This document shows, one piece after another, positions 18,841 to 61,400 of a stretch of DNA of 64,000 bases (the first letter of the stretch is position 1; each line of letters begins with the position of its first letter). A program made the position numbers and the translations under genes. Origin of the DNA: Zygnema circumcarinatum SAG 698-1b. Its lineage: Eukaryota > Plantae > Zygnematophyceae. The notes under the pieces are model-generated. The model saw only the letters and a program-made list of their open reading frames with translations. It ran no database searches and was not told the origin of the DNA. The DNA lies in NCBI GenBank assembly GCA_037447605.1, contig CM074818.1:756617-820616 (forward strand), read 5' to 3'.

Positions 18841-19761
18841 GTGAGGCTGCTACTCGTCAACCCTGCTGCAGGGAGTCAGAGCAAGTAGAAAGAATGTGTG
18901 GATTGGACTAGAGTTATTACGGGAATGTGTTTCAAAATTTCGTTGAGCTGCGGACAGATTTGGAACTTCTATTCACCGCGACCTACTCTCCCCTATCTCC
19001 TTCCCCGCTCTCTCAGCTCTTTTGATCTTTCCCGTATCTCTCTCTCTCTTTTTTGTTCCTCTTTCTCTCCCTATCCAGCTCTCCTCGCTCACTTCCTTTT
19101 CCTCTCCCCTCGTCCAGTCCTCCCCTTCTCCTCTCCCTTGCCCTCTTCCCGTTCTCCCCTCTCCCTCTCCAACTTATTATCATTTTCCCCTCTCCCCTCG
19201 CCTTCGCCCCACGCCCCTAGCCCTCCACCCTTCTCCCATCTCTCCATCTCTCTCTCCCCTCTCCCCTCTCCCCTCTCCCCTCTCCCCTCTCCCGTCTCCC
19301 CTCTCCCCTCTCCCCTCTCCCCTCTCCCCTCTCCCCTCTCCCTCTCCCTCTCCCTCTCCCTCTCCCTCTCCCTCTCCCCTCCCCTCTCCCCTCTCCCCTC
19401 TCCCCTCTCCCCTCTCCCCTCTCCCTCTCCCCTCTCCCCTCTCCCCTCTCCCTCTTCCCTCTTCCTCTTCCCTCTTCCCTCTTCCTCGTCCCTCGTCCCT
19501 CTTCCCTCTTCTTCCCTCTTCCCTCTTCCCTCGTCCCTCGTCCCTCGTCCCTCGTCCCTCGTCCCTCGTCCCTCGTCCCTCGTCCCTCGTCCCTCTTCCC
19601 TCTTCCCTCTTCCCTCTTCCATCGTCCCTCGTCCCTCGTCCCTCGTCCCTCGTCCCTCGTCNNNNNNNNNNNNNNNNNNNNNNNNNNNNNNNNNNNNNNN
19701 NNNNNNNNNNNNNNNNNNNNNNNNNNNNNNNNNNNNNNNNNNNNNNNNNNNNNNNNNNNNN

Positions 19762-21550: not shown

Positions 21551-24500
21551 CTAGCAGTTCGATTTTGCCATGTCCTCCACAGCTTGAGCACCTTCCAAGG
21601 GTCTCCTCTCCTCTAAAACGTTCCCACTCTCACTCCCTCTCGATCTCCCTCCCTTTAGCTTCGCCAACTGATACATAGAACATCCGATGCTAGAATAAGT
21701 CAGCCCGAAAACTAGATCGGCAATCGTTGGGTGAAAAAGTTGAATGCGCTGAAGGAGGCTTAGGATAAAAAGCAAAAGCTGTACATAACGAAAAATATTT
21801 TCAAAATTTGGATGATTTTGTGCGAATCTGAAATATAGAACAAACCCTAATAGCCCCTCCCTCCCCTCCCTCCCAACCTACCTGCCTCCCTCCACCCCCC
21901 TCATCCATCCCCTCTCCCTCCCACCCCCTTCCCCACCTTCCCCCTCAACCCCTTCTACCCCCCTCCCCCCTCCCCTCCCTCCCTCCCGTCTCCCTCCCCT
22001 CCCTCCCCCCCTCCCTCCCTTCCGTCCCCTCCCTCCCGTCCCCTCCCGTCCCCTNNNNNNNNNNTCCCTCTCTCTCCCCCTCTCTCTCCCTCCCTCCCTC
22101 ACCTGCGTCTCCAGCTCCTGCACTCTCTGCAGAGAGGTGCTTTCCGCCTGCGCCCTGAGCTCCTTTTCGCTTTCGAGCTGCTCCGTGAGTTGGTAGCGCA
22201 GTTCGGCCATTTCCTGAGTCATGTCCTCCGCCTCGTCCAGGGCTCGAGCCTTCTCACGCTGAAGCTGAGCCTGCCCTTCTCTCCCACATTCTTTACATAT
22301 TAGAAAATTATTTCATAGGAATTGAAATGAAAAGGGTGTCTTAGAAGGCGAGGAGATTCAGAAAGGCCATTTTTTGTTTGTTTGGTTTTTTTGTTTTTTG
22401 GGGGGGGGGGGGGGAAGGGAAGAGGTGTAATTTTTGACCTTGAGCGATTCTTCCCCGTTTTCAAGTTCCTCTACTCTCGCCTTCAAGGTTTGGACCTCTT
22501 CCTTTGCAGCTTCTGCCTCAGCCTTCGCTTCCTGCACTTGAAAACTGCTTACTTATAAAACAGCAGTTTCAGGGCATCGAATGTATATGAGATCCCTAAG
22601 AACCCTAAAAACACAGTGACAGACAGAGAGAAAGACACAGAGAGAATGAGATATGGAGGGAAGGGAGAGAGTGAGAGAGAGACACAGAGAGAGAGTGATA
22701 TAGACGGGAGAGAGAGAGTGAGCGAGAGAGAGGGTGGGAGAGAGAGCGTATGCAAGCAATTGTGGAGAGGGAGTGCAGGGTGATGGGAACAAAAGAGATG
22801 CGAGAAGGGAGACAGATAGAGAGAGAGAGGGGGAGTGGGAGAAATGCTACCTTAAGAGCTGATTCTAATTGCTTCACCACACCCATTTGGAGGCCCAAAT
22901 GCGCTTCTCCCCACTCTGACATATTCCGTACAGCTCCTCCTTCAGAGAGAGGGGTCGCTTCCTGTTAGGTTCCCATATCCCATCGACACGTGTCGCAGTT
23001 TTACGCGTTTTCAACATCATTAGAGAGAGAAAAAGAGAGAGAGGGAGAGGGGAACGGAGGGAGAGAGGGCAGAGAGGAACAGAGGTGAAGAGGGGCACCA
23101 AGAGAGAGTGCGAGAGCGAGATTTTCGCGTAAGAAAGCGAACATGGCAGGTATACCTTTACATAGAAAGTGGTAATAGAAAAGAAAAACAGGAGGGAGAG
23201 AGGAAGGGAGGGAGGGAGGGAGGGAGGGAGGGAGGGAGGGAGAGGAGCAACTCCTTACAGGTGGAGTAAGTGGCGAGGCTGGCGGTACAGGTAGAGGGGC
23301 TCGTCCATCCGCCAATGTCAGATTGCCACGTGGCACATCTTCAGCCAAACTCGCCTCGTCCGCATCCTGACTCGTGGCACTGTTGCCCCCTCCCCATTGG
23401 CGGAGAAAACAGATACGACAAACTCATAGTGTTCAAGATTATACATAATAACACAATACAATCTGTACAAAAAGATACAATGTTAATTGCTGAAAAGCAT
23501 TTCCTTTCGCCAAAAATATCTACATCATCTTCACCTCTCTGCATTTCGTCAAGACATGCGCCGAAAGGGCTAAAGACAACAGAGTTTTTTGCGTTGCATG
23601 TACGGGTTCAATAGTCTTTTGTTAGTATTTACATTCCCTCTCATTCGGTAAACCTAAAGACCATCAGAACCCGGGAAACTTGAAAATGTAAAGTTGAGAG
23701 CAGGATTTGCTAAAGCAGGATTTGTAGACTGACCTTAGAAATTCAGAAGCTTCGGAAGAATCTTCTGGAAGCTCCTTTACAATCTGTATTTCCGTTGTAT
23801 TTAAGACTGCTGGTTTTGAACTTTGAAGATTATCTGAAGCAGCAGCCCCCCTATTCCCGGCTTTCAAAGACTTTAGAGTGCCCTAAAGAGTGCCTTAACT
23901 CTTCTTAAGTGAAACCCTAAAAGAACATTGAAACTTTGAATCAGAAGTGATTTTAATCACTTCAGAAAACAAGGTCAAATTAAAAGAAAAAGTGAATAGT
24001 TTCAACTATTATCACACCTCCATCACTTTGTAATTTCCGCTGCCGAAAAAGCTCAAATCGAAGAGCTTCGGAAAGAGCCAACTCTGCTCTTAATCTCTGT
24101 ATCTCTCTCTGACAACCATCCCTTCAAACTTTACAAACTTCAGAAATCTTAGAATTTCACACTCCTTAAAGCCTTCTCATGAATGTAGGAGAAAAAAACA
24201 AAAAAAAAATCAAATGGATAGGGGTTTTAGGTCCCTCCCTTTCTATGTCGACAAGGAAATGAATATTATTCTATCTTAAAACGGTAGGTTGGTCTGCATA
24301 CTTGGAGAGCGAAAACATCCTCCTCCCCATAGTGGTCCAGTCTCTCCTCCATCTCCGCCAGCTTCCCTCCCATCCGCTCTACCTCTCGTGCCTTTTCCGC
24401 GTACCTCCTCCTCCATTCCTCTGCACAGCCCTCCATGCAGCTCTTGAGGGACAAGTCAGGGTTGAGAGAGGTGAGAGAAGTGAGAGAGGTGAGAGAAGTG

Positions 24501-25904: not shown

Positions 25905-26384
25905 CCCCTTCCCTCAAATCACCTCCTCCTCCTTCCTGTTTGACCGCTCACAACCAAACCAACAGACGAAAGAAATAAATAATTTCTCGGAAAAGGCATG
26001 TAGAAAAGGAAATAAAGGTCAGGANNNNNNNNNNAGGGAGGGAGGGAGGGAGGGAGGGGAGGGAGGGAGGGAGGGAGGGAGAGAGGGAGGGATCACGAGC
26101 CCAAAAGTAAAGCCCATATTCAAACGAGTCCCCATTGGGGTACCAAACAAGCACAGCTTTTATTTATTTTCCTTCCTACTTCTTCGTTCCTTAGCATCGG
26201 TGGAAAACAGCAGCATTGGTGGTTCATGCGAGCATCCATGCACCCCAAAAACATGCAATTAACACACTACCAATGCTAGAGGGTTTCAATCGTTAAAAAA
26301 ACAAAAAAAAAAAAAAATGTAGAAAGGGAAAATCGAAATCCGTACTTCTTTTAAGTGAACATCAGGAAAACAAACAGGATGGGT

Positions 26385-50200: not shown

Positions 50201-53200
50201 CGTTGGGCTAAGTTGAAGCTTTCAATATGTAATGTGGGAACTTGCTACTGATAGGTTTTTGAGGTGAATGCAGAAATTTATGAAAAAATTCATCAGGCTA
50301 ACAACCACATTTGCAAGTACGTTGAGTTGGGATCGTTCGTCCTGTTCACGGCTCTGTACATCACGGTGTTGTACTTGCAAGCGAACTCATTTCTCACTTA
50401 TGAGATTTCTACTTCTCATGAAGCCTTGCTTCCGCCGGTGAGAATTTTCTCACATGCGTCGCCGGCACTTACAGGGTATTAGGGTTGCAGCTTTCTCCCT
50501 GTCTCTTACTCTCTCAATACTCTTCTCCTTTTGCAACTTCCTTGGCTCCCTTTCACTAGTCTGGTCTGTCAGACGGGGAGAGAGAGTGGTAGCATGCATT
50601 TCTTGCTTTCCTTAAGTTAAGAGTGATTACTAGAGTTACAGTACAGGCGCCCTTCCTTGCTATCGGCGGTCACCGCGGTTACCGTACAGGCGCCCTTCTT
50701 TGCTCGCGGCTGTCACCGCGGTCACCGCTGTCGACGGCGGCGAGCCAGCCCGGCAGCCGTACTGCACGTGGCATCGAGCGGAAATAATGGATTCTTAGAA
50801 ACCCTAAACGGCTACACATGAAACATTTTACCGTTCGAGAAGCATGCACCATAGGAGTTATTCCTCTTCAGTCTTGTAACTTGGGGAGGTGGAAGTGACT
50901 CGGGAGGAGAAGGCGGCGTAAATCCTAATGTGAACCGTTTTCTTTATTCATTGAGTGTACGGTATGAAGATGTTTAAGGTGTATGCTTGCAGGGCGCAAG
51001 CGGGACTGCTCCAGTCATATTTTCCAACGGCCCTTTTGACATATACGGTTGGCTAAATGACTCGTTCATTCAGGTTTGCTGAATCATTCTCTCCTTTTCC
51101 CTTGTTATTTTTCCGCTTTTTCTATCGTCCTTTGTTATACGCATAGACTCCTTTTTTATCATTTATCCTTTGCGGAATTTAGGGTTGATGAGATCCTACG
51201 ATGAGTTACGTGCGTGAGAGCTGCAAGATCAGGATTCGACCGGCAAGATTAGGTTGGGTCGGCATGATTAGGGTTGGCGTGTCATATTTTGATTATGAAG
51301 TTCCTGAAATGTGCGGGTTTGTCTTGCAGACGGTGTGGGCGGACCCATTGTGCGGCAACGGCATCTGCGAGTCCCCGACGGAGCACGAACAGTTCGGACG
51401 GTTTGGCTGTTTGGCGGACTGCGGCAAGTTCGCGAACACAACAAGGGTCGTGCTCAGCCTCTCTAACGACTTCACGTCGCCGCAGGAGCAGGCGGCTGCC
51501 TCATGGAACCTCTGCATGTTGCTCCCCGTCGGGCTCTGCTGGTGAGGCCTGCTGCTCTTCAACACTGCTGCAGGGAGTCCGAGCAAGTAGAAAGAATGTG
51601 TGGATTGTACTAGTTTCATTGCGAGAGTGTGCTCCAAAATTTCTTTCAATTGCGAACAGATTTGGTAAATCTATTCACCGTGATCTACTCTCTCCTCTCT
51701 CGTTCCCCGCTCTCTCAGCTCTCTAAGCAGTTTTTATCTTTCCCATATCCCTCTATCTTTCCTCTTCCTCTTTCTTTCACCCTCCTCTTCTCGCTCACTT
51801 TCTTTCCCTCGCCCCTCTTCCTCTCCTTCTCCCCTCGTCCCCTCCTTTGCCCTCTTCCTGTTCTCCCCTCTCCCTCTCCCTCTTTTTATCCGTTACCCCT
51901 CTCCCTCTCCCTCGTTTTATCCGTTACCCCTCTCCCCTCTCCCCTCTCCCNNNNNNNNNNCCCCTCTCCCCTCTCCCCTCTCCCCTCTCCCCTTCGGCCT
52001 CTCCCTCGCTCACTCTTCCCTCCATATTCATCTCCGATGAAGAGCTGCACCATTCATATCTTAAGTACACCCCTAACCGTTTATGTGCACCCCTGAGTTC
52101 TGAATGTTTTGCCTTCTCGGCCATTGGGCACTACAATATAGCGAAGCTGTATAACCCTTTGAAGAGTGCAAGGCAGTGTTTTCAACCAACGCTCAAAAAG
52201 ACAGTCGAAGAAATCCTTATCTTGGGGCCTTAGAGTTCCTTGACTTTACTTCCCCAGGTATTCAAGTGACCAGGTCTTTTTGGAGCTCCATCAGGAAAAC
52301 AACGAGATCCAATTGGACCTCCCTGATGGCGACTGGAAGCTTCAGCTCAATGCACCCTCGGGAGGAGTGAAGGGGCAGATCACCATGGCGGGCAATGAGA
52401 CGGATCTGCTCCGTTTTGGAGGCTGCAATGAGACTCAGCCGCTGTTCGATGCATGCAGAGAAGTAGGCACCTGTCCTTCTTAAGGGATTTTAGGGTTTCC
52501 TGCTTTTTAGGGTTTGGTACTTCAGTGACCTCGAGGAACATATTTTTAGGGTTTGCAGAATGTGAGGGGAGAGGAGAGAAGTGGAGTGTTCCACTTTGTG
52601 TCAGTACAGTTGGAACTGACAATCAGCTAAAGATTGTGTTTGTAACCTGTGTTGTGTAACGCCAATGCGAAGCTTAGGGTGTTCTTGCGTGTGATAGTGA
52701 AACCGTTGTGAGCGTATTCGTCTTTAACTTCCTGTTTTCCTTGTCCTTGAATACTCAGTTCTCTTATACCTTCTTCAAACTGATAGACTCTGACGATGGC
52801 TTTTTGGTTGTACTTTGAAGGCTTGTGCGTCGATCTCGACATGCATTCAAACATATTGCGAGCCATCAGCTGATTATTCTGGTGACGTGAATCTCACCAT
52901 ATCAGCAGCATTTTTGGACTGTGCCACTGTATGCGCTTCGACTCCTGAAGCACTGTTGAACCTGAACGTGACGTCATGCAGCGACGATGTACGGCTCTCA
53001 ACCCTAAACTCCAAAGCTTTGAGTTTTTTTTTTTTCCAGTTCTTCGGATAATCAGGGAATCAAGAGAATATTTTGAACTGACGTTTCTTTCTTTCGATAT
53101 CCAGAAATGTAGTGTTGACAATTCCATTTTTTATTTTTATCTGTTTGCCTGGGTGGTGTTTACCAGGTTTTGCATTCTGGGAATCATTCGCTCCTCCAAA

Positions 53201-55447
53201 CGGGAACTCTCAATTGCACTTGTTGGTCGCCTTTTCCTTCTTCCCGCTTTTGTCTTTCCCCTTTTTTCTTTTAATCCTCGATGTTCTTAAGCATCATCTG
53301 TGTTAAACTCGTCCATTTAGCCTCTTAGTGCTTCTGCATACCTAGATTTTGCTGGAGCACTCTGAATATTACTTTCTAGTGTTGGAGAAGTTTAGAGTTG
53401 GAGTATTAGTAACCGAGGGAGGCAATGATCCATTTGGAGCAGGGCCAAAAAGTGCTGCTCCTGCACCTCCGCCTGCCCCGTCTTCAACAAGATCAAGTCC
53501 GCCACCTCCAGTCTCACCAGTGAGTGCTCACTCGTTTTTTCCCTCTCACTAACTCTACCCTTCTCTCCCTCTCCCCAGTTCTCTCCTACGTCTCTCACTA
53601 CCGGCTCTCAACATTTGAAAACCCTCAATCCGAAATTCTAACCCTTCTCGGCATACAGACGGCTGGCGGCCGCCGACTCCAGTCCTCCGACGATGAATAC
53701 CTGCAGGAGTGCACGGGTGACTCCTCCCTCCGCCTCCTCCTCCTGAACGCATTCTCTGTCTCCCTTCCTGCCCCTCCCCCAGTCCCTCCCTTCCGACCCC
53801 CGATTCTAACCTCCTTATCTTCTCCCCATTCACCTTCCCTCCCTCCACAGCGGCCGCACCCTCCACATCCGACGCCCAGGATCGCATCTGGTCCGGTCTG
53901 GGCCGCGACGACTTCGAGCGCACGAACCGCATGGAACTGGCCGTGAGGCGCGCAGTCATGACATTGATAAAGGACACGTGTGTTGGGACATATAAATTCT
54001 TCAACAATCATGACACCGATAATATGACAGCCTTCATGAAACTTTACATGGGAGCCTCCAACTTAACAGTTTCGGAGTCTTTCGACTATACTCAATTTAC
54101 AATTGACACCTCAGTATACGGCTTGCTCTCGGCTTTGTACAAGGCACACTCGTGAGTGCGGGAACAGACCACAAAGTTCCAAAAAGCAAGAAACTTAGGC
54201 TTTCTATGAGCCCTCCCACTCGAAAATCCCTAAGATTTTGAGAAACAGCGGAACCTTGGAGCTTTCTAAGTGCTTTCACAACCATTAGAGAACTCGACCA
54301 CTAGAAGACTTTTAAAAGTGAGCTTGTTTGTATTTGCAGCGACGTTCCATTTTTTGGTCAAGATCAAATCAATCGCATTATCGACATCCTTGTTGCAGCC
54401 ATTGCTTCGGTTGGCACCTTCAAAGATAATTATTCGGTAGATCTCGGAAACTGGCTGCATCGCATGGACAATTGTCTCGCAGATTCGTATAAATACACTT
54501 GCCGTGCAGGTGACCTTAAAACATCTGATCAGTTTACTTTGGTTGTTTTTGATTCCTGAATATTTTTTGTCTTTCCAAATTCTTTTTAGTCCTTTAAGTT
54601 GCTCTTAGAATCTATCAGTCGGTTCGGACGACTTTGTACACCTTGTATAAAGGTGGAAATGAATTTTCTACAAATAGGAATTCTAGATTTTAGAGCACGT
54701 TAGATTTTTCATGGATGTGCGTACTTTCTGACGAAAATCTGACAATCAACGTTTTTCCAAAAAATGATTTTTTTTTGCAGCGGATCACATTCTTCCGTGG
54801 TCATCGGGCTCCCAACTGAACACCACCATCTACGTGGGAGATACTGTGGAGTGGGTCTGGTCTGACGACAACCCGCACTCCATAGCAGGTGCTCTCTCTC
54901 TCTCGATCTCCATCTCTCTTTCAGCTCTCTCTTTTACTCCCTCACTCTCTCCCTCGTCCATTCGCTCAGCCTCCCTTTCTCTCTCCCTACTACTCCCCTC
55001 TATTTCTCATCCTCCCTCCCTCCCTCCCGTTTCTTGAGTCTCTCCCTCTCCTTCCCTTCCTCCCTCCGTCCCTTCCTTGCTCCCCCCTTCTCTTTTCGCA
55101 CCCTGCGTATCCTTTCGTCGTCCCTCTCGCCGTGTCCATGCCTCTCTCCCTCCCTTCTCCTCCTTCATCCCTCCCTCCCGTTGCCTTCCTCCCTCCCACC
55201 CTCTCCCGCCATCAACCACTCCCTCCTTTTCCCATCCCTTCCTCCCTCCCTCGCCCATCCAGAGTCGAACAGTTCGAGCCTCACCTTCGGCAACGAGCTT
55301 GACTGGATCTTTGATGGCTTTGGCTCCCGACGTTTTGTGGTTTCGAGAAAGACGAAGTGCTCCCCCGACAACCTTGACGTCTACGGCCTCGTACCTTGCG
55401 TTCTTGGTATGTATGCATGAACGTATGTATGTATGTATGTATGTATG

Positions 55448-55478
<31 letters not shown>

Positions 55479-58400
55479 TGTGCGAACGAGTATGCTAACC
55501 TTATGGTTCCGGAGTCTTCAAGTAATCAGGATTTGGAGTAATTGGAGTCTGAAGGCGCTCAGGTTACTAAGTTATTATTGTGCTGTTTGTAAGCTCGAAA
55601 GGTGGCTACGGTTTTAGAGTGGTTACGTTGTCCTCGGCATAGTTCCAAGCAGAAATGCGAAATCGCTTTGCGCAAGCAATGGTCAGCAATGTGATGCAGG
55701 GGAATCTCTTTCTGATCCGATATATTATGTTGTGGATGTTCTACCCGGCAGAAATTCCATCATCGGAAGACTCTCCCACATTCACATACAGTTACCAGTT
55801 CACTAGTGATGAGTTTCCCGATCTTCCCCGTGTTATTCAGTACTCGTCACGAGGCTATGGCGACTCAAATAACGGATACCTCACTATTCTTGAAAGGCCA
55901 AATAGCCCTCCATGTGAGAACCTAAGAACCTTGAACGACTAAAACCTTTCACATGTTCAGCTTTCTGACGACATATTTCATGTACTTGAAATGGCTCCGC
56001 TTGTCTGCTGAAAGAACATCGCGTTGGACACCTTTCAGCTTGTTCAACCCCTCGTTCTACTCAGAGACCCTTTCATTCTTACAATTTGAAATATTTCCTG
56101 TTCATTTCCTTGCAGATGTTAGCAACAGAACGTATGAAAACTTCGTCCCCATCAATTTCCAGTGCTCCCAGGACTGTACCCTGAGCAAACTGAGCAACGG
56201 CAAATGTGAACCGGAATGCAACAACTACTACTGCGCTTTTGACGGGGGAGACTGTTCCTGCCCTTTGGACGAGAACGGCCTCCCTTCCTGCGCCTGTCCG
56301 GTCGGGCAGACAAGAGGAGACGATGGAGGTAAGAAACCTTAAGAATCTTGAAAACTGCTTAAAGCTTTGGTAACCTTAGAACGGTTCCCCTGTCTCTCTC
56401 CTCTCTCTTTCCTCTCTCCCTCCTTCTCCGCTCTCTCTCCTCCTTCAGTCCTTGTCACGATTCTCTACGTTCCTCAACACCTTTCACTTGCTCTCACTCT
56501 CGTCGTCTCCTCTCTTTTTTTCACTCTTTGTCCCTCTCTCGCCTTCGCCTTCCGTTTTTCGTCTCTTTCTATCTCCTCTCCTCCTCCGCTTTTTCCCTCT
56601 CTCGCTCACTCTTCCACTCTTGCCTTGTCCTCCTTCCTCTTTCCTTCGCCCTCTCTCCCTTCCTTTCCTTCCTCCACTCTTACCGTGAAGCTCCACACTT
56701 ACCCTGTTGCCCGCATTTCTGCAATGCATTAATAGTTGTGTTTTTTTTTTTTTTTTGCTGCAGTGTGCTGTGTGGGAGGAGCCATTGGTTCAGACTTAAA
56801 ATTTACTTTTTCCCTTCGAACCTACGGAGAAAGTTTGTCCGAGTCCAATGCAAATTTTGCTCCCTCAAGTACCACCCCTCTCACTCGCACAGTTGCCATT
56901 CAAAACAGGTAGATATTTAGATTTTCAAGACTCAGAAATCCAGATGCAAACAGCCTGAATACTTGTCATCTCCCAAAATTTCTGTTTCTTTGTTCAGTAT
57001 TCAACGATTCGGTGATTTTGAAGAGTGTCGATCCGTAAACTAGAGAGAAAACTCAATTTGCTGCAGAAAACTCAGTTTTGAGGAGGATTTTCAGGAGGGC
57101 AGAGGGGGGTTAAGAGAAGCAGAGAAGATTTGTTAGGGGGGTGGGAGGGCAAGGAGGGAGGAAGAGGAACAAAAATATATATGTTTTGTTTTTGCGCTGC
57201 AGAGTGGTAATTGGACTACTACTTTCTCACGAGAGGACAAGGGGAGATCTGAAGTGGTGTGACGAGGGAAAGTAAGCAGTTCTATGCTGCCCCTTCTACT
57301 CTTAGTGTGTCTTTGATTTATATAATAATAATTAAAATGTGCTTATGAAATCACTATTAGTATTAAGTGTTATTACTCTTTTCTACCTCCTGGAATCGTA
57401 GAAGCCTTAAAATTCCTCAAAACGTGAGAGCATTCAAGGCCAGCTTGATAAGAATAGAAATTCTAAATCTCTGAAACCCTAATGAAACCCTGAAGTTCGG
57501 GTTTTGAAACTCTCATTTTTTGCTCAGGAACCCTTTATTTGGGGTATCACACCCTAATAACATGCACTGAAACCTTTCCACTTAGCACCATATGTGCTAA
57601 ACGTAGTAAGATAAGTTAGTAGCTATGAAATTTAGAAAAGATAAGAAAATCACAAGTGATTTCTCACAGGTAATCATTTGTAAAGGTCATCTTTGACGCT
57701 CAATATGGAGAATGGTTAAGAGCACACATGGTAGGGGCTAACGTTACGGAAATGATTGCAGAGGTGGCGGTTGCCAGAAAACTAGAAACAACTACCCACG
57801 AAATTATTAAATCAGTGCACCCTCACCAGCTATTACAACAGCTTAGCTTCCTGAAACTTAATAACCGTCAACATAAGATAGGTATACATCTTATTGGTAA
57901 TGAAAGAGAAAAAAGACCGAGTAGACGATTCGTTGCACGCGAAGGAATCACGTTAGAGCAGTGCATCCTTTTTGCTCAAATTTACTACTTTCTGATCGTT
58001 TTGCTCCTGCAGATTCAGCCCAATCACTAAGAATTTGGCCATTTGTAGCAGAAATCTCAACTTGTCATGGGGAGTGGCATCTCCCTTTTTACCGAATTCC
58101 GTTCTTTACAACAGCACATATGCAGACGAGCAGAGCTCCAGATTTCAGGAATTAATGTGTTGTACGGAGGAACGGGAAGCGGAATTTAATCCGAATGGAA
58201 CTCCGTACGGATTTCGACCGGCTGCAATTGAGGTAATTTGTGTCTTTAGGGTTTGTAGGGAAGCAAGATCTTTCAAGCAGATTTTTCCGTATTTCCTAGT
58301 AAATATATGTCATTTCTAGAACCAGATACTTTCATCTTGAGCCTTTGAACCTGTTTGTATCTAGAAAGATGTTAAGCCAAGTTGGAAATTTCGAGATGTG

Positions 58401-61400
58401 CAACAAAATGTAAGCACGTTCAAGAGATTTTTGAAGGACTGTTTTCAAAACCCTGACTTTCAATGAGTTTGGCGACTTTGCAGGGATCTTTTGATTTTGG
58501 ATTCCGTTACATTTTCGACGTAAACTTGGGAAATGAAGCTGCAACGGCACTGCTGCAATACTTGACCGACGGATTCTTTTACGACACTTTTACGGAATCT
58601 GCTTCCGTTCAGCTTCTCACATATAACCGTAAGGCTGCTCGCCAAGATCGCGCAAGAAAAAAATGCTACAGACTCATTTTTTTTGGAATTTTTCCGTTGC
58701 ATATTTGTTTAACGTATCGCTTGAAATAATGACATTTCAGCTGCAATCCTTCTTTTTTATTTGAAACTGATCTTCTCCCTTGCTCTTCCTGAGTGCAGCT
58801 AAGACGAGATTCTTCACACTTACGCAAGTCAAGTTAGACTTTCAATACGGTGGAAAAATTGTGGCATCATCGAACATAGACTCTGTTAAGCTTGAAGTGT
58901 ATTCTAGCACGCAAGACTGGGTGAGGTTAGGGCTAGAAATTGTATTTGTTTTGGGATTAATCTATTCGATTTTCGACGAACTGAGGGAACTCATGAAGGC
59001 GTATTTGACAAGGGGCAATTTTTTGTACCATTTTACGAGCATTTGGAATTATATCGACGCTCTTTCCCTCGGGATTATGACCACCGGAGTCATTCTCTGG
59101 TGAGTTCTATGAGCCCTAATTCTACAGCGCAAAGGTTCACAGAAAGCCTGATGTTGGGGCGGGGAGAGAGAGTGGAGAGAGAAGTACAGAGAGGAGAGAG
59201 AGCCCAAGGACATGACGTGAAGTGGCAGAGAGAAGATTAGGTGATGGTTATGAGATAATACGAAGAGCCTTAGAGTGTGTAAGGACGAGAAATAGGGGTG
59301 GTGAAAATGATTATGGGAGGGGGGAGTGGCAGAGAGTGGGAGTGGGGGAAGGGCGATGAGAAGAAGAAAGTACGAGAAAAGGAAATATGAAAAGTAGTGA
59401 AGTATGGGAGAGCGAGAAAGCAGGTCTGCGAGAAGAGAGAAGAGAGTGAAAGAGAACTGGAAGACGGAAAGAGAGTGATTGCATGGCATTCGGAGGATTT
59501 GGAAACTCAACCTTTTCCATACTACATTCTCTTGCTATAGGGTCTTACTTCTGACTGCCTCTAAAAACCTCCATCTTGCTACTTTCCTTTTCCCTCCTTC
59601 CACTCCTGCCCTCCTCCCTTGTACCCTCTCTGTCACACTCACTCTCTCTTCCTCTCTCCACTTTTCTCTCTTCCCATACCCCCTCCCTCTCTAATTATCT
59701 CCCCCTTCCTCCCTCCATCCCTCTCTCCATCTCTCTCTCATCTCACTCTCTCTCTCTCTCCCTCTCCCACTTCTCACACACTCTCCCTCCCTCCTCATAC
59801 CCAGGTTGAATTATGTATTTAGAAACGCCCGGCGCTTCAATACGAACATCAAGTACAGTATCTACGGAACGGAGCCGGGCCAATTCCTTCAGCTGCTGCC
59901 CGACACGCAGCTGCCCGAAGCCCTGAAAGTTTTCACTGATGTCGAAGAAATCATCTACATCCGCACGTACTATGTGGCCCTGCAGGGCATCAAGTACGAA
60001 CCCTAAAACTCCGAAATCCTAAAACTAAAACCAAGCCCAAGCCCAAGGCCAAACCCCTCAACTCTAAAATCCCAACCGAACTCAACTGTTCGAAACTGAA
60101 AGACTTGACCAAATCAAACCCTAAAACTCGCCTTTTCTTGCTCTTTTTTCGTTTGGGGTAAAATATGAAAATGCAGCATTTTCTTAATGGTTCTCCGCAT
60201 CTTGAAGCTGATGGATTTCCAGCCGCGTATGGGCACTATTACTCGCACCATAGCCGTAGCCTCCATCGATCTCATCCACTTCCTCATAATATTTTCGGTG
60301 ATTTTCCTCGGCTACGCGGTGTACGGTCACGTGGTTTTTGGGCACAATCTTAGGCAGGTGAGTTTGGAAGGGTTCAGAGTTTATGTTTTAAGGGAGTGTT
60401 GGGCTTAAAAGGGTTGAAGGGGTTACAAAGTGGCTTCGGGTTTGTATGGGGTTCTGGGATCTCAGAGGTCTTCAAGGCTTTAAAGGGCGGCTATAACTGA
60501 AAAGTTCGGATTTGTGGGGCAATTGGGTTCTTAGAGGCTGAAGAGAGGGCGAAAGCGAGTGAGGGAGTGGAGTGAGAGAGGGGAAGAGAGTGGGTATGGA
60601 GTGGCGGGGGGGGAGGGGGAAAGGGTGGGGAGTAGCAAAGTAGGATACGAGAGAGAGAGGGAGGGGTAGAGAGTGGGGGGAGGGCGGAAGGGGGACGAGT
60701 GAGAGAGGGGGGGAAGTCAGGAAGTGTCGGAGTGAAGGGTTCAAGAGAGTAAGGGAGAGAGAGACATGGTCACTCCGGAAGTAGCTCTGTAAGCTTCCTT
60801 CACATAGAGCGAATAGAGAAAAGCATGCTCCCACGACCTCTCCCCGTCCCCCTTCCACTACCCCTCTCTCACACCCCACCTCCTCCCCCTGTCCTCCCTC
60901 CTATTGCAGTTCAGCACTCTTGGTCGGTCTCTGATCACCATGTTCAACGTCCTCGTGGGGGATACCTCCGTGTCCGACTACTTTATAGAGCTCAAAGGGT
61001 GGGAGCTGGCAGCGGCCGTACTGCACTGGTGGTCGTATGTGCTCGTAGTGAACTTCATCACTTTCAACCTCCTTATTGCCATCATTATCGAAGCATATAT
61101 GGAAGTCAGGGTAAGAAACATCTCGCAGTTTTTCTGTCAATATGGTATCGGATATCATGTCAGGTTATCCGGTATAGTGATAGTTTGTTTTATAAGTTCT
61201 ATTCGGCGATATTGGTTGTGCTTTGTCTGGACGAGATTTTAGGGTTTTCCCATCATTGCGAGTTGCGAGGCTTTTGGGGATTCAAGTTGGAGGCTCTTTC
61301 GTATTTTTTCTCACATTTCTAAAGTTTTTAGGGGTACTAAATCTCACAATCTTATTGTAGGTTTTTTATATGCTGAAGGGCTTCCCTTGACCAGGACTTA

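What the first reader, a model, noticed from the sequence alone, without database searches (positions are those of the whole stretch)
57600..57960. Bacterial lpdA fragment embedded in intron 17 of the channel gene
Seen: 57677-57827 encodes 50 stop-free residues of E3 dehydrogenase, with abrupt ends, inside an intron whose flanking exons (57203-57271, 58013-58232) splice in frame. From recall, KVIFDA.YGEWLG.HM.GA.VTEMIAE..VARKLETT.HEI.KSVHPHP is the Bacteroidota form and differs from plant mitochondrial and plastid E3. G-to-R in WLRAH suggests decay after insertion. Adjacent AT-rich DNA (~57600-57676, ~57828-57960) may be further foreign pieces. Inference: recent bacterium-to-alga DNA transfer, possibly break-repair filler from an associated or endosymbiotic bacterium.
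Basis: partly seen in the sequence, partly recalled or inferred. Interest (0 to 1): 0.7.

Follow-up and report, generated by a model that had tools for sequence, protein, structure and literature searches.

The report
Dead bacterial lpdA scrap in algal intron
A 151-letter dead piece of a bacterial energy-metabolism gene (lpdA, most like Bacteroidota) really is built into a normally spliced intron of this green alga's ion-channel gene, a small fossil of bacterial DNA getting pasted into an algal chromosome.

Summary
Window 57677-57827 (+), 151 nt, is a stop-free piece of the C-terminal dimerisation domain of dihydrolipoyl dehydrogenase (Pfam PF02852, E 1.8e-10; TIGR01350 positions 391-440 of 461).

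- **Origin:** it is 82-90% identical in protein to Bacteroidota LpdA. Of the 80 best genome hits, 78 are labelled Bacteroidota. It scores only 15-23 bits against mitochondrial E3 of pea and yeast.
- **Ends:** both ends are abrupt, and the flanks show no significant homology.
- **Not an assembly artefact:** contigs from three separate DNA studies cross both junctions with zero differences, at host-like depth. None branches towards a bacterial lpdA.
- **Intron:** an RNA-type run shows the GT..AG splice 57271->58013 that removes the piece.
- **Donor and decay:** best DNA identity to any sampled bacterium is about 80%, and most differences are at third codon positions. Three of 72 near-invariant sites have changed, including the invariant Gly to Arg. 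So the donor is an unsampled lineage and decay since insertion is light (about 4%).
- **Neighbouring DNA:** it shows no bacterial homology. Two short stretches (57584-57621 and 57848-57882) also occur elsewhere in the host genome.

The best reading is capture of a stray bacterial DNA fragment during break repair; that mechanism is inferred, not shown. The scan has noted similar Bacteroidota scraps (sufB, infB, gpmI, EF-G) elsewhere in this same genome.

The parts
57677..57827 (+). 151-nt pseudogene fragment of a Bacteroidota-type dihydrolipoyl dehydrogenase (lpdA/E3). It covers dimerisation-domain residues about 391-440 of 461, on the same strand as the host gene.
   Evidence: Family matches. 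82-90% aa identity to Bacteroidota. Best nt identity about 80%. Exact bounds.
57272..58012 (+). Host intron (GT..AG, 741 nt) that contains the fragment.
   Evidence: Splice joint 57271->58013 in an RNA-type run, depth 278. A retained-intron contig covers 57691-57953 at depth 19.
57203..57271 (+). Upstream host exon of the PKD-type channel gene.
   Evidence: RNA contigs cover 57200-57271. Open frame 57204-57269.
58013..58232 (+). Downstream host exon of the PKD-type channel gene.
   Evidence: RNA contigs run from 58013 onwards. Open frame 58014-58232. PKD_channel and LNR domains occur in other exons of the same gene.
57584..57621 (.). 38-nt stretch that has a second copy at another host locus. 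That copy has one extra A after 57598 and different flanks.
   Evidence: Loose ends on both sides and about twice the depth in three DNA runs. The depth ratio to single-copy DNA is about 1 in all three.
57622..57676 (.). 55-nt AT-rich spacer (29% GC) of unassigned origin, directly left of the fragment.
   Evidence: No homology to lpdA flanks. Single-copy depth. GC.
57828..57847 (.). 20-nt spacer of unassigned origin, directly right of the fragment.
   Evidence: No homology.
57848..57882 (.). 35-nt stretch of a dispersed host repeat. Depth is about 5-10 times single copy, and several variant contigs run on into other flanks.
   Evidence: Depth bin 57846-57892 and the loose ends at 57848 and 57882 in X1, X5 and X6.

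Best explanation
A 151-nt piece of the lpdA gene of a bacterium of the phylum Bacteroidota (order unresolved, lineage not yet sampled) became integrated into the alga's nuclear chromosome, inside an intron of a PKD/TRPP-type channel gene. It has no function. It is only about 11% of the gene, lacks the catalytic disulfide, the FAD/NAD domains and the C-terminal Glu of the His-Glu pair, is spliced out with the intron, and has begun to decay. Shown: bacterial origin, abrupt ends, continuity with host DNA in independent data sets, the splicing, and light decay. Inferred: the mode of entry. The most likely route is capture of a stray extrachromosomal DNA fragment at a chromosomal double-strand break by end joining, as happens with organelle DNA (NUMT/NUPT) and filler DNA in plants. 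It may have been captured together with short host-derived snippets that now flank it.
For: - Identity: PF02852 E 1.8e-10; TIGR01350 positions 391-440.
- Origin: the 80 best genome hits are 82-90% identical in protein, and 78 of 80 are labelled Bacteroidota, 37 of them Cytophagales. The metagenome scan gave the same range. Short named proteins are Bacteroidia, Bacteroidota or Cyclobacteriaceae LpdA. There was no viral relative.
- Selection history: 20-26 of the 30-34 differences to the nearest relatives lie at third codon positions. That divergence therefore arose under selection in bacteria.
- Decay: only 3 of 72 near-invariant nt sites are changed. R15, A31 and T40 are never seen in 160 homologues.
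- Reality: 630-nt contigs covering 57248-57877 with 0 differences occur in two 2019 studies (X5, X6). A 275-nt contig covering 57603-57877 occurs in a 2023 study (X1). In X1 its depth is 21.4, against 12.7-25.4 for neighbouring unique contigs. No listed loose end lies at 57677 or 57827.
- Intron: GT..AG joint at depth 278.
- No transposon ends or target-site duplication. No other lpdA part or bacterial-like piece appeared elsewhere in the window when it was compared with the 160 fetched bacterial loci.
- Mosaic neighbours: 57584-57621 and 57848-57882 also occur elsewhere in the host genome.
- Mechanism by analogy: mosaic organelle insertions by end joining (PMC6215612), NUMT-mediated break repair (PMC2567098) and filler DNA in plant NHEJ (PMC3289645).
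Against: - No donor closer than about 80% DNA identity was found, so junction microhomology cannot be examined.
- No empty site in a paralogue, strain or sister species was recovered, so the insertion event itself is not reconstructed.
- The read evidence is from k-mer contigs, not single long reads. All runs carry one species label and may be one culture lineage.
- The 151-nt length equals a common Illumina read length. This is suspicious at first sight, but it is answered by the independent contigs that cross both junctions.
- The three odd residues could have existed already in a fast-evolving donor.
- The flanking host-like snippets might predate the insertion and not be part of a filler mosaic.
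Confidence: 0.82

Rival explanations
1. Assembly or contamination artefact: a read of about 150 nt from a culture-associated Bacteroidota bacterium was stitched into the intron during assembly, polishing or gap filling.
For: The length of 151 nt equals a common read length. The scaffold has N gaps at 19662-19761, 22055-22064, 26025-26034 and 51951-51960. Algal cultures are often not axenic (general knowledge).
Against: Contigs built separately from three DNA studies cross both junctions with 0 differences at host-like depth, and none branches into bacterial sequence. An RNA-type run of a fourth study holds 57691-57953. The nearest N gap is 5.7 kb away.
Confidence: 0.03
2. A duplicated scrap of the alga's own gene: the host has a functional lpdA of Bacteroidota type from an older horizontal transfer, and this is a DNA-level pseudogene fragment of it.
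For: Functional bacterial-type genes are reported in this genome by other notes of the scan (unchecked). The fragment's GC of 44% is close to that of the host exons, 46-48%.
Against: No second contig of at least 90% likeness covers 57677-57827 in the DNA runs, and no highly expressed matching contig appears in the RNA-type run. No near-identical protein was found in the protein collections. The window holds no other lpdA part. Several other short pieces of Bacteroidota housekeeping genes are noted in this genome, which fits raw DNA influx better than one domesticated gene. An older, diverged parent gene is not excluded.
Confidence: 0.05
3. Remnant of a once larger bacterial insertion, or of a carrier such as a transposon or virus that had picked up the gene. 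Most of it was later deleted or decayed beyond recognition, leaving only the most conserved 151 nt.
For: The 30 nt upstream are marginally more similar to lpdA than chance (mean identity 0.32 against 0.24, P about 0.08). The neighbours include a dispersed host repeat at 57848-57882. An 864-bp two-gene Bacteroidota piece is noted elsewhere in this genome (unchecked).
Against: Decay inside the piece is only about 4%, so adjacent bacterial DNA of the same age should still be recognisable. Identity nevertheless drops from about 76% to background within one codon at both ends. There are no terminal inverted repeats or target duplications. The piece is single copy. No viral relative was found.
Confidence: 0.08
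4. The piece has been co-opted, for example as a cryptic exon, a small ORF (57728-58030, 100 codons from an ATG) or an intronic regulatory element.
For: An ATG-started 100-codon ORF exists on the sense strand. Intronic RNA covering 57691-57953 is present.
Against: The intronic contig has a depth of 19, against 278 for the spliced joint, which is typical of pre-mRNA. No joint uses the piece. The ORF runs on into unrelated intron sequence, and the exact ORF is absent from the protein collection. Invariant residues are altered.
Confidence: 0.02

Closest known systems
Rickettsial gene-like DNA in the nuclear genome of the green alga Volvox carteri (Kawafune et al. 2015, PMC4324946)
   Same: Non-functional bacterial DNA is integrated in the nuclear genome of a non-phagotrophic green alga and was detected by similarity to bacterial housekeeping genes.
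   Different: The Volvox case is about 9 kb with four genes, from Rickettsiaceae with known living endosymbiotic relatives in related algae. Here the piece is one 151-nt scrap from Bacteroidota. It lies in a streptophyte alga, inside an intron, and no living donor is known.
Nuclear Wolbachia transfers and other endosymbiont-to-host DNA integrations in insects and nematodes (my own knowledge; reviewed in PMC5664097, which I did not read)
   Same: Dead bacterial DNA of varied size sits in eukaryotic chromosomes and is validated by reads that span the junctions.
   Different: Those donors are germline-resident endosymbionts that are nearly identical to the insert. Here the best match is about 80% in DNA, and an intracellular donor is not shown.
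NUMT/NUPT insertions and filler DNA at repaired double-strand breaks in plants (PMC6215612, PMC2567098, PMC3289645)
   Same: These are short, abrupt-ended insertions of non-nuclear DNA without transposon hallmarks. They are often mosaics of unrelated snippets, often lie in introns or open chromatin, and decay neutrally.
   Different: The source here is a free bacterial genome, not an organelle of the same cell. The empty site and junction microhomologies could not be examined.
Bacteroidota dihydrolipoyl dehydrogenase LpdA (TIGR01350; PF02852 dimerisation domain)
   Same: 50 residues align without gaps at 82-90% identity, including the conserved run ending in HPH.
   Different: Only residues about 391-440 of 461 are present. 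The invariant Gly is changed to Arg, and the piece ends before the Glu of the His-Glu pair. It is a fragment of the gene and not a member of the enzyme family in any functional sense.

Membership tests
Dihydrolipoyl dehydrogenase (E3, LpdA; TIGR01350) | Pyridine nucleotide-disulphide oxidoreductase dimerisation domain (PF02852) above the gathering score | tested here: met
   41.4 bits against a cut-off of 25.3, but only profile positions 50-99 of 110 are covered.
Dihydrolipoyl dehydrogenase (E3, LpdA; TIGR01350) | Full-length equivalog score with the FAD/NAD-binding domains and the redox-active disulfide | tested here: not met
   TIGR01350 scores 46.6 bits against a cut-off of 408.8, at positions 391-440 of 461 only. 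No other lpdA part was found anywhere in the window by tblastx against 160 bacterial loci.
Dihydrolipoyl dehydrogenase (E3, LpdA; TIGR01350) | Conserved residues of the C-terminal active-site region, and the invariant Gly before the H-x-x-G motif | tested here: not met
   Gly (160 of 160 homologues) is Arg here, and Val (159 of 160) is Ala. The piece stops right after HPH, so the downstream Glu is absent.
Nuclear integration of bacterial DNA (dead lateral transfer) | The sequence is of bacterial, not host or organellar, ancestry | tested here: met
   82-90% aa identity to Bacteroidota, against 15-23 bits to pea and yeast mitochondrial E3. Plastid-type E3 was not compared directly. No cyanobacterium is among the 80 best genome hits.
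Nuclear integration of bacterial DNA (dead lateral transfer) | Both junctions with host DNA are present in independent sequence data at host copy depth | tested here: met
   Contigs of X5, X6 and X1, from three studies, cross both junctions with 0 differences. In X1 the depth is 21.4, against 12.7-25.4 for neighbouring contigs. These are contigs, not single reads.
Nuclear integration of bacterial DNA (dead lateral transfer) | The donor is a known associate or endosymbiont of the host | not testable with these tools
   No contig in the three DNA runs branches from the junctions into a bacterial lpdA. The best public match is about 80% in DNA.
End-joining capture / filler DNA (NUMT/NUPT-like) | Abrupt ends, with no terminal repeats or target-site duplication | tested here: met
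End-joining capture / filler DNA (NUMT/NUPT-like) | A pre-insertion (empty) site that shows break repair with microhomology or a small deletion | not testable with these tools
End-joining capture / filler DNA (NUMT/NUPT-like) | Mosaic of unrelated snippets joined at one site | tested here: inconclusive
   57584-57621 and 57848-57882 also occur at other host loci. Whether they arrived together with the bacterial piece is unknown.

The most novel reading that the evidence does not exclude
This scrap, together with the other short pieces of Bacteroidota housekeeping genes that the scan has noted in the same genome (sufB, infB, gpmI, EF-G and a two-gene piece), may come from one donor lineage. That donor would be an unrecognised present or past intracellular or tightly attached Bacteroidota partner of this zygnematophyte-type alga. 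Its DNA would have leaked repeatedly into the nucleus, leaving a datable fossil record of the association and showing the raw influx from which functional bacterium-to-streptophyte gene transfers are drawn.
Probability: 0.15. Interest if true: 0.8.

Novelty: new member of a known kind. Interest (0 to 1): 0.45.

Why it matters
Functional gene transfers from soil bacteria into the algal ancestors of land plants are much debated, and contamination is the usual objection. Here is a cleanly validated piece of bacterial DNA in a streptophyte alga that was dead on arrival. It lies inside a spliced intron and is confirmed in independent sequencing studies. It therefore shows that bacterial DNA does physically enter these nuclei, without any selection to explain its presence. 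On its own it is a small curiosity. A census of such scraps in this genome could measure the rate, size spectrum, age and donor range of the influx.

Tried and rejected
- **Closer donor:** I scanned GTDB genomes, JGI metagenomes, 1.84 billion protein representatives and short proteins. Nothing exceeded 90% aa or about 80% nt identity.
- **Odd 'chimeric' top hits:** P0149 shares the rare V19 and an Ala at position 40, and P0124 looked similar. I followed them as possible parallel insertions in other eukaryotes. Their contigs are bacterial, with frameshifted or cut genes, and are only 72-74% identical in DNA. Rejected.
- **Extension of homology into the flanks:** blastn, tblastx and a register test found none.
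- **Flanking AT-rich DNA as pieces of neighbouring bacterial genes:** there were no hits in 160 loci with up to 5 kb of flank.
- **Virus or phage carrier:** none found.
- **Transposon hallmarks and RNA families:** none found. One 17-nt imperfect direct repeat (57807-57823 and 57953-57969) is judged to be chance.
- **Plasmid collection:** only an irrelevant 42-nt Neisseria match.
- **Placement within Bacteroidota:** a 151-column tree is unresolved. It has 1 starred branch of 78, and the nearest rows are L012 and L001.
- **Exact look-up of the 100-codon ORF:** it is absent from the protein collection.
- **Literature on zygnematophyte-Bacteroidota associations or bacterial scraps in these genomes:** nothing specific was found.
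- **Joined exon model:** I neither built nor searched one. The frames were checked exon by exon.

Full report
**What is there**

Window 57677-57829 on the + strand reads as 51 codons without a stop. It matches the pyridine nucleotide-disulphide oxidoreductase dimerisation domain (PF02852, E 1.8e-10, 41.4 bits against a cut-off of 25.3). Among NCBIfam models, the best match is dihydrolipoyl dehydrogenase TIGR01350, at positions 391-440 of 461 (E 2e-12). Against 1.84 billion representative proteins the best E-value is 2.4e-20. A stop-free run of this length in DNA of the intron's composition has a chance of about 0.03.

**Whose gene it was**

- A scan of one genome per bacterial and archaeal species returned 573 confirmed relatives. 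The 80 best are 82-90% identical over residues 1-50.
- Of those 80, 78 are labelled Bacteroidota: 37 Cytophagales, then Chitinophagales, Saprospirales, Sphingobacteriales, Bacteroidales and Flavobacteriales. The two exceptions are metagenome bins, labelled Roseobacteraceae and Bifidobacteriaceae. I suspect they are mis-binned contigs.
- A metagenome scan gave the same ceiling of 90%. The few named short proteins are partial LpdA of Bacteroidia, Bacteroidota or Cyclobacteriaceae.
- Solved mitochondrial E3 of pea (1dxl, 15 bits) and yeast (1jeh, 23 bits) are far weaker matches.
- I could not compare a plastid-type E3 directly. No cyanobacterium is among the best genome hits.
- A 151-column tree does not resolve the order within Bacteroidota. 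It has 1 starred branch of 78, and the nearest rows are L012 and L001.

**Exact limits**

I compared the window column by column with 160 homologues. First and second codon positions match the bacterial consensus from 57677 to 57827 and stop matching within one codon on either side. The 30 nt upstream (P about 0.08) and the 23-45 nt downstream (P about 0.75-0.95) are no more similar than random intron segments in the same register. The piece is therefore 151 nt with abrupt ends.

**How decayed it is**

- The best DNA identity to any sampled bacterium is 79.5-79.9% (L141, L076).
- Of the 30-34 differences to the nearest relatives, 20-26 are at third codon positions. That divergence accumulated under purifying selection in living bacteria, so the donor lineage is simply unsampled.
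- Bacterial pairs at the same DNA identity share on average 46.1 of 50 residues. The fragment shares 42-45 with its nearest relatives.
- Three interior residues are never seen in 160 homologues: Arg for an invariant Gly, Ala for Val (159 of 160), and Thr for Gly/Ala/Ser.
- At 72 near-invariant nucleotide sites the fragment differs at 3, about 4%.
- I read this as light neutral decay after insertion. A fast-evolving donor could explain part of it. Converting it to years would need a mutation rate that I do not have.

**Is it really in the alga's chromosome**

The stretch 57200-58240 is held by runs of at least seven studies, all with one species label. I laid the contigs of three DNA runs from three studies, plus one RNA-type run, on 57000-58400.

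- In X5 and X6 (two studies of 2019), a single 630-nt contig covers 57248-57877 with no difference. That span runs from the end of the upstream exon, through 405 nt of intron and the whole bacterial piece, to 50 nt beyond it.
- In X1 (2023), a 275-nt contig covers 57603-57877 with no difference. Its depth is 21.4, against 12.7-25.4 for the neighbouring unique contigs.
- No listed loose end lies at 57677 or 57827, so no contig branches from the junctions into a bacterial lpdA. This argues against a chimera. It also argues against a nearly identical living donor in these cultures.
- The contig breaks at 57848-57882 are caused by a short multi-copy repeat. Overlapping contigs (57853-58025) continue into the downstream exon.
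- The 151-nt length, equal to a common read length, made me suspect a gap-fill artefact. These independent contigs dispose of that.
- Limits: these are k-mer contigs, not single reads. Eight further loose ends were not shown. All samples may descend from one culture.

**Host context**

The RNA-type run X12 carries the joint 57271->58013 (GT..AG, 741 nt skipped) at depth 278. It also has a retained-intron contig covering 57691-57953 at depth 19. Frame 57204-57269 is open and, with 2 + 1 split bases, continues into the open frame 58014-58232. I checked this exon by exon and did not build or search the joined sequence. Other exons of the same + strand gene carry PKD_channel (60187-, 60904-) and an LNR domain (55953-). 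This agrees with the separate note on this gene. The number 'intron 17' was not verified.

**The neighbourhood of the piece**

- The intron is AT-rich: 29-40% GC, against 44% in the piece and 46-48% in the exons.
- 57584-57621 has a second copy at another host locus, with one extra A, different flanks, and a depth ratio of about 1 in all three runs.
- 57848-57882 belongs to a dispersed repeat at about 5-10 times the single-copy depth, with several variant contigs.
- The 55 nt and 20 nt directly beside the piece are unassigned.
- There are no terminal inverted repeats, no target duplication and no Rfam match.
- tblastx of the whole window against the 160 bacterial loci found only this piece.
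A mosaic of snippets, as in filler DNA, is possible but not shown.

**Mechanism**

- Shown: bacterial origin, abrupt ends, single copy, continuity with host DNA, removal by splicing, and partial decay.
- Inferred: a stray bacterial DNA fragment was ligated into a chromosomal double-strand break by end joining. Organelle DNA and filler DNA enter plant chromosomes in the same way (PMC6215612, PMC2567098, PMC3289645).
- The closest published algal parallel is the 9-kb rickettsial segment in the Volvox carteri nucleus (PMC4324946).

**Rivals**

- Artefact: refuted.
- A scrap of the host's own Bacteroidota-type gene: there is no second matching contig in DNA or RNA, but an old diverged parent gene is not excluded.
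- Remnant of a larger insertion or of a carrier element: the sharp drop of identity at about 4% decay, the lack of transposon ends and the absence of a viral relative speak against it.
- Co-option: there is no splice use, and only low intronic RNA.

**Relation to earlier notes of the scan**

The same genome has other short Bacteroidota-like scraps on other pieces: sufB 157 nt, infB 257 nt, gpmI 211 nt, EF-G, and an 864-nt two-gene piece. I did not test these. They prompted both the read-length artefact check and the 'single donor' reading given as the novel case. They are leads and do not count as support.

**Verdict**

This is a genuine, well-validated, non-functional insertion of bacterial DNA. 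It is a new member of a known kind of event, of moderate interest alone and of greater interest as part of a genome-wide census.

Noticed in passing
window 57188-57303 and 58013-58239 (variant contigs): A second copy of at least these two channel-gene exons exists in the same organism. It has 4-7 differences per 70-116 nt and is present in DNA runs. In the RNA-type run it is spliced at the same joint, at depth 101 against 177. Its intron shares 57272-57303 and about 57400-57446 but skips 57304-57399. No copy of the lpdA piece at 90% likeness or more was laid for it, so it may serve as an empty-site comparator.
   Followed up: partly
window 55000-55300, 56400-56700, 59200-59800: There are long, strongly strand-skewed polypyrimidine or polypurine low-complexity tracts (GC skew down to -0.95 and up to +0.75) in introns of the channel gene. 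They produce long spurious Ser/Pro/Leu-rich ORFs.
   Followed up: no
window about 55440-55520: A microsatellite with a short TG/TA-rich unit, seen as a repeated 'MYVC' translation in two ORFs.
   Followed up: no
window 19662-19761, 22055-22064, 26025-26034, 51951-51960: Runs of N (100, 10, 10 and 10 nt): scaffold gaps. One lies inside the channel gene region, 5.7 kb upstream of the fragment.
   Followed up: no
window 57807-57823 and 57953-57969: A 17-nt imperfect direct repeat (82%). One copy lies at the 3' end of the bacterial piece and the other 146 nt downstream in the intron. It is probably chance, but it could be a microhomology used in repair.
   Followed up: no
L161 (ENA contig, 41.9 kb, coverage 0.12) and L162: Several top 'chimeric' LpdA-like proteins in the representative library come from bacterial contigs whose genes (clpB, lpdA) are split by frameshifts, probably through low-coverage assembly errors. 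They are not eukaryotic insertions.
   Followed up: yes
run X1, loose end at window 57287: A contig of X1 runs on into the letters CTGTCTCTTATACACA, which I recognise as a Nextera transposase adapter end left in the public contigs.
   Followed up: no
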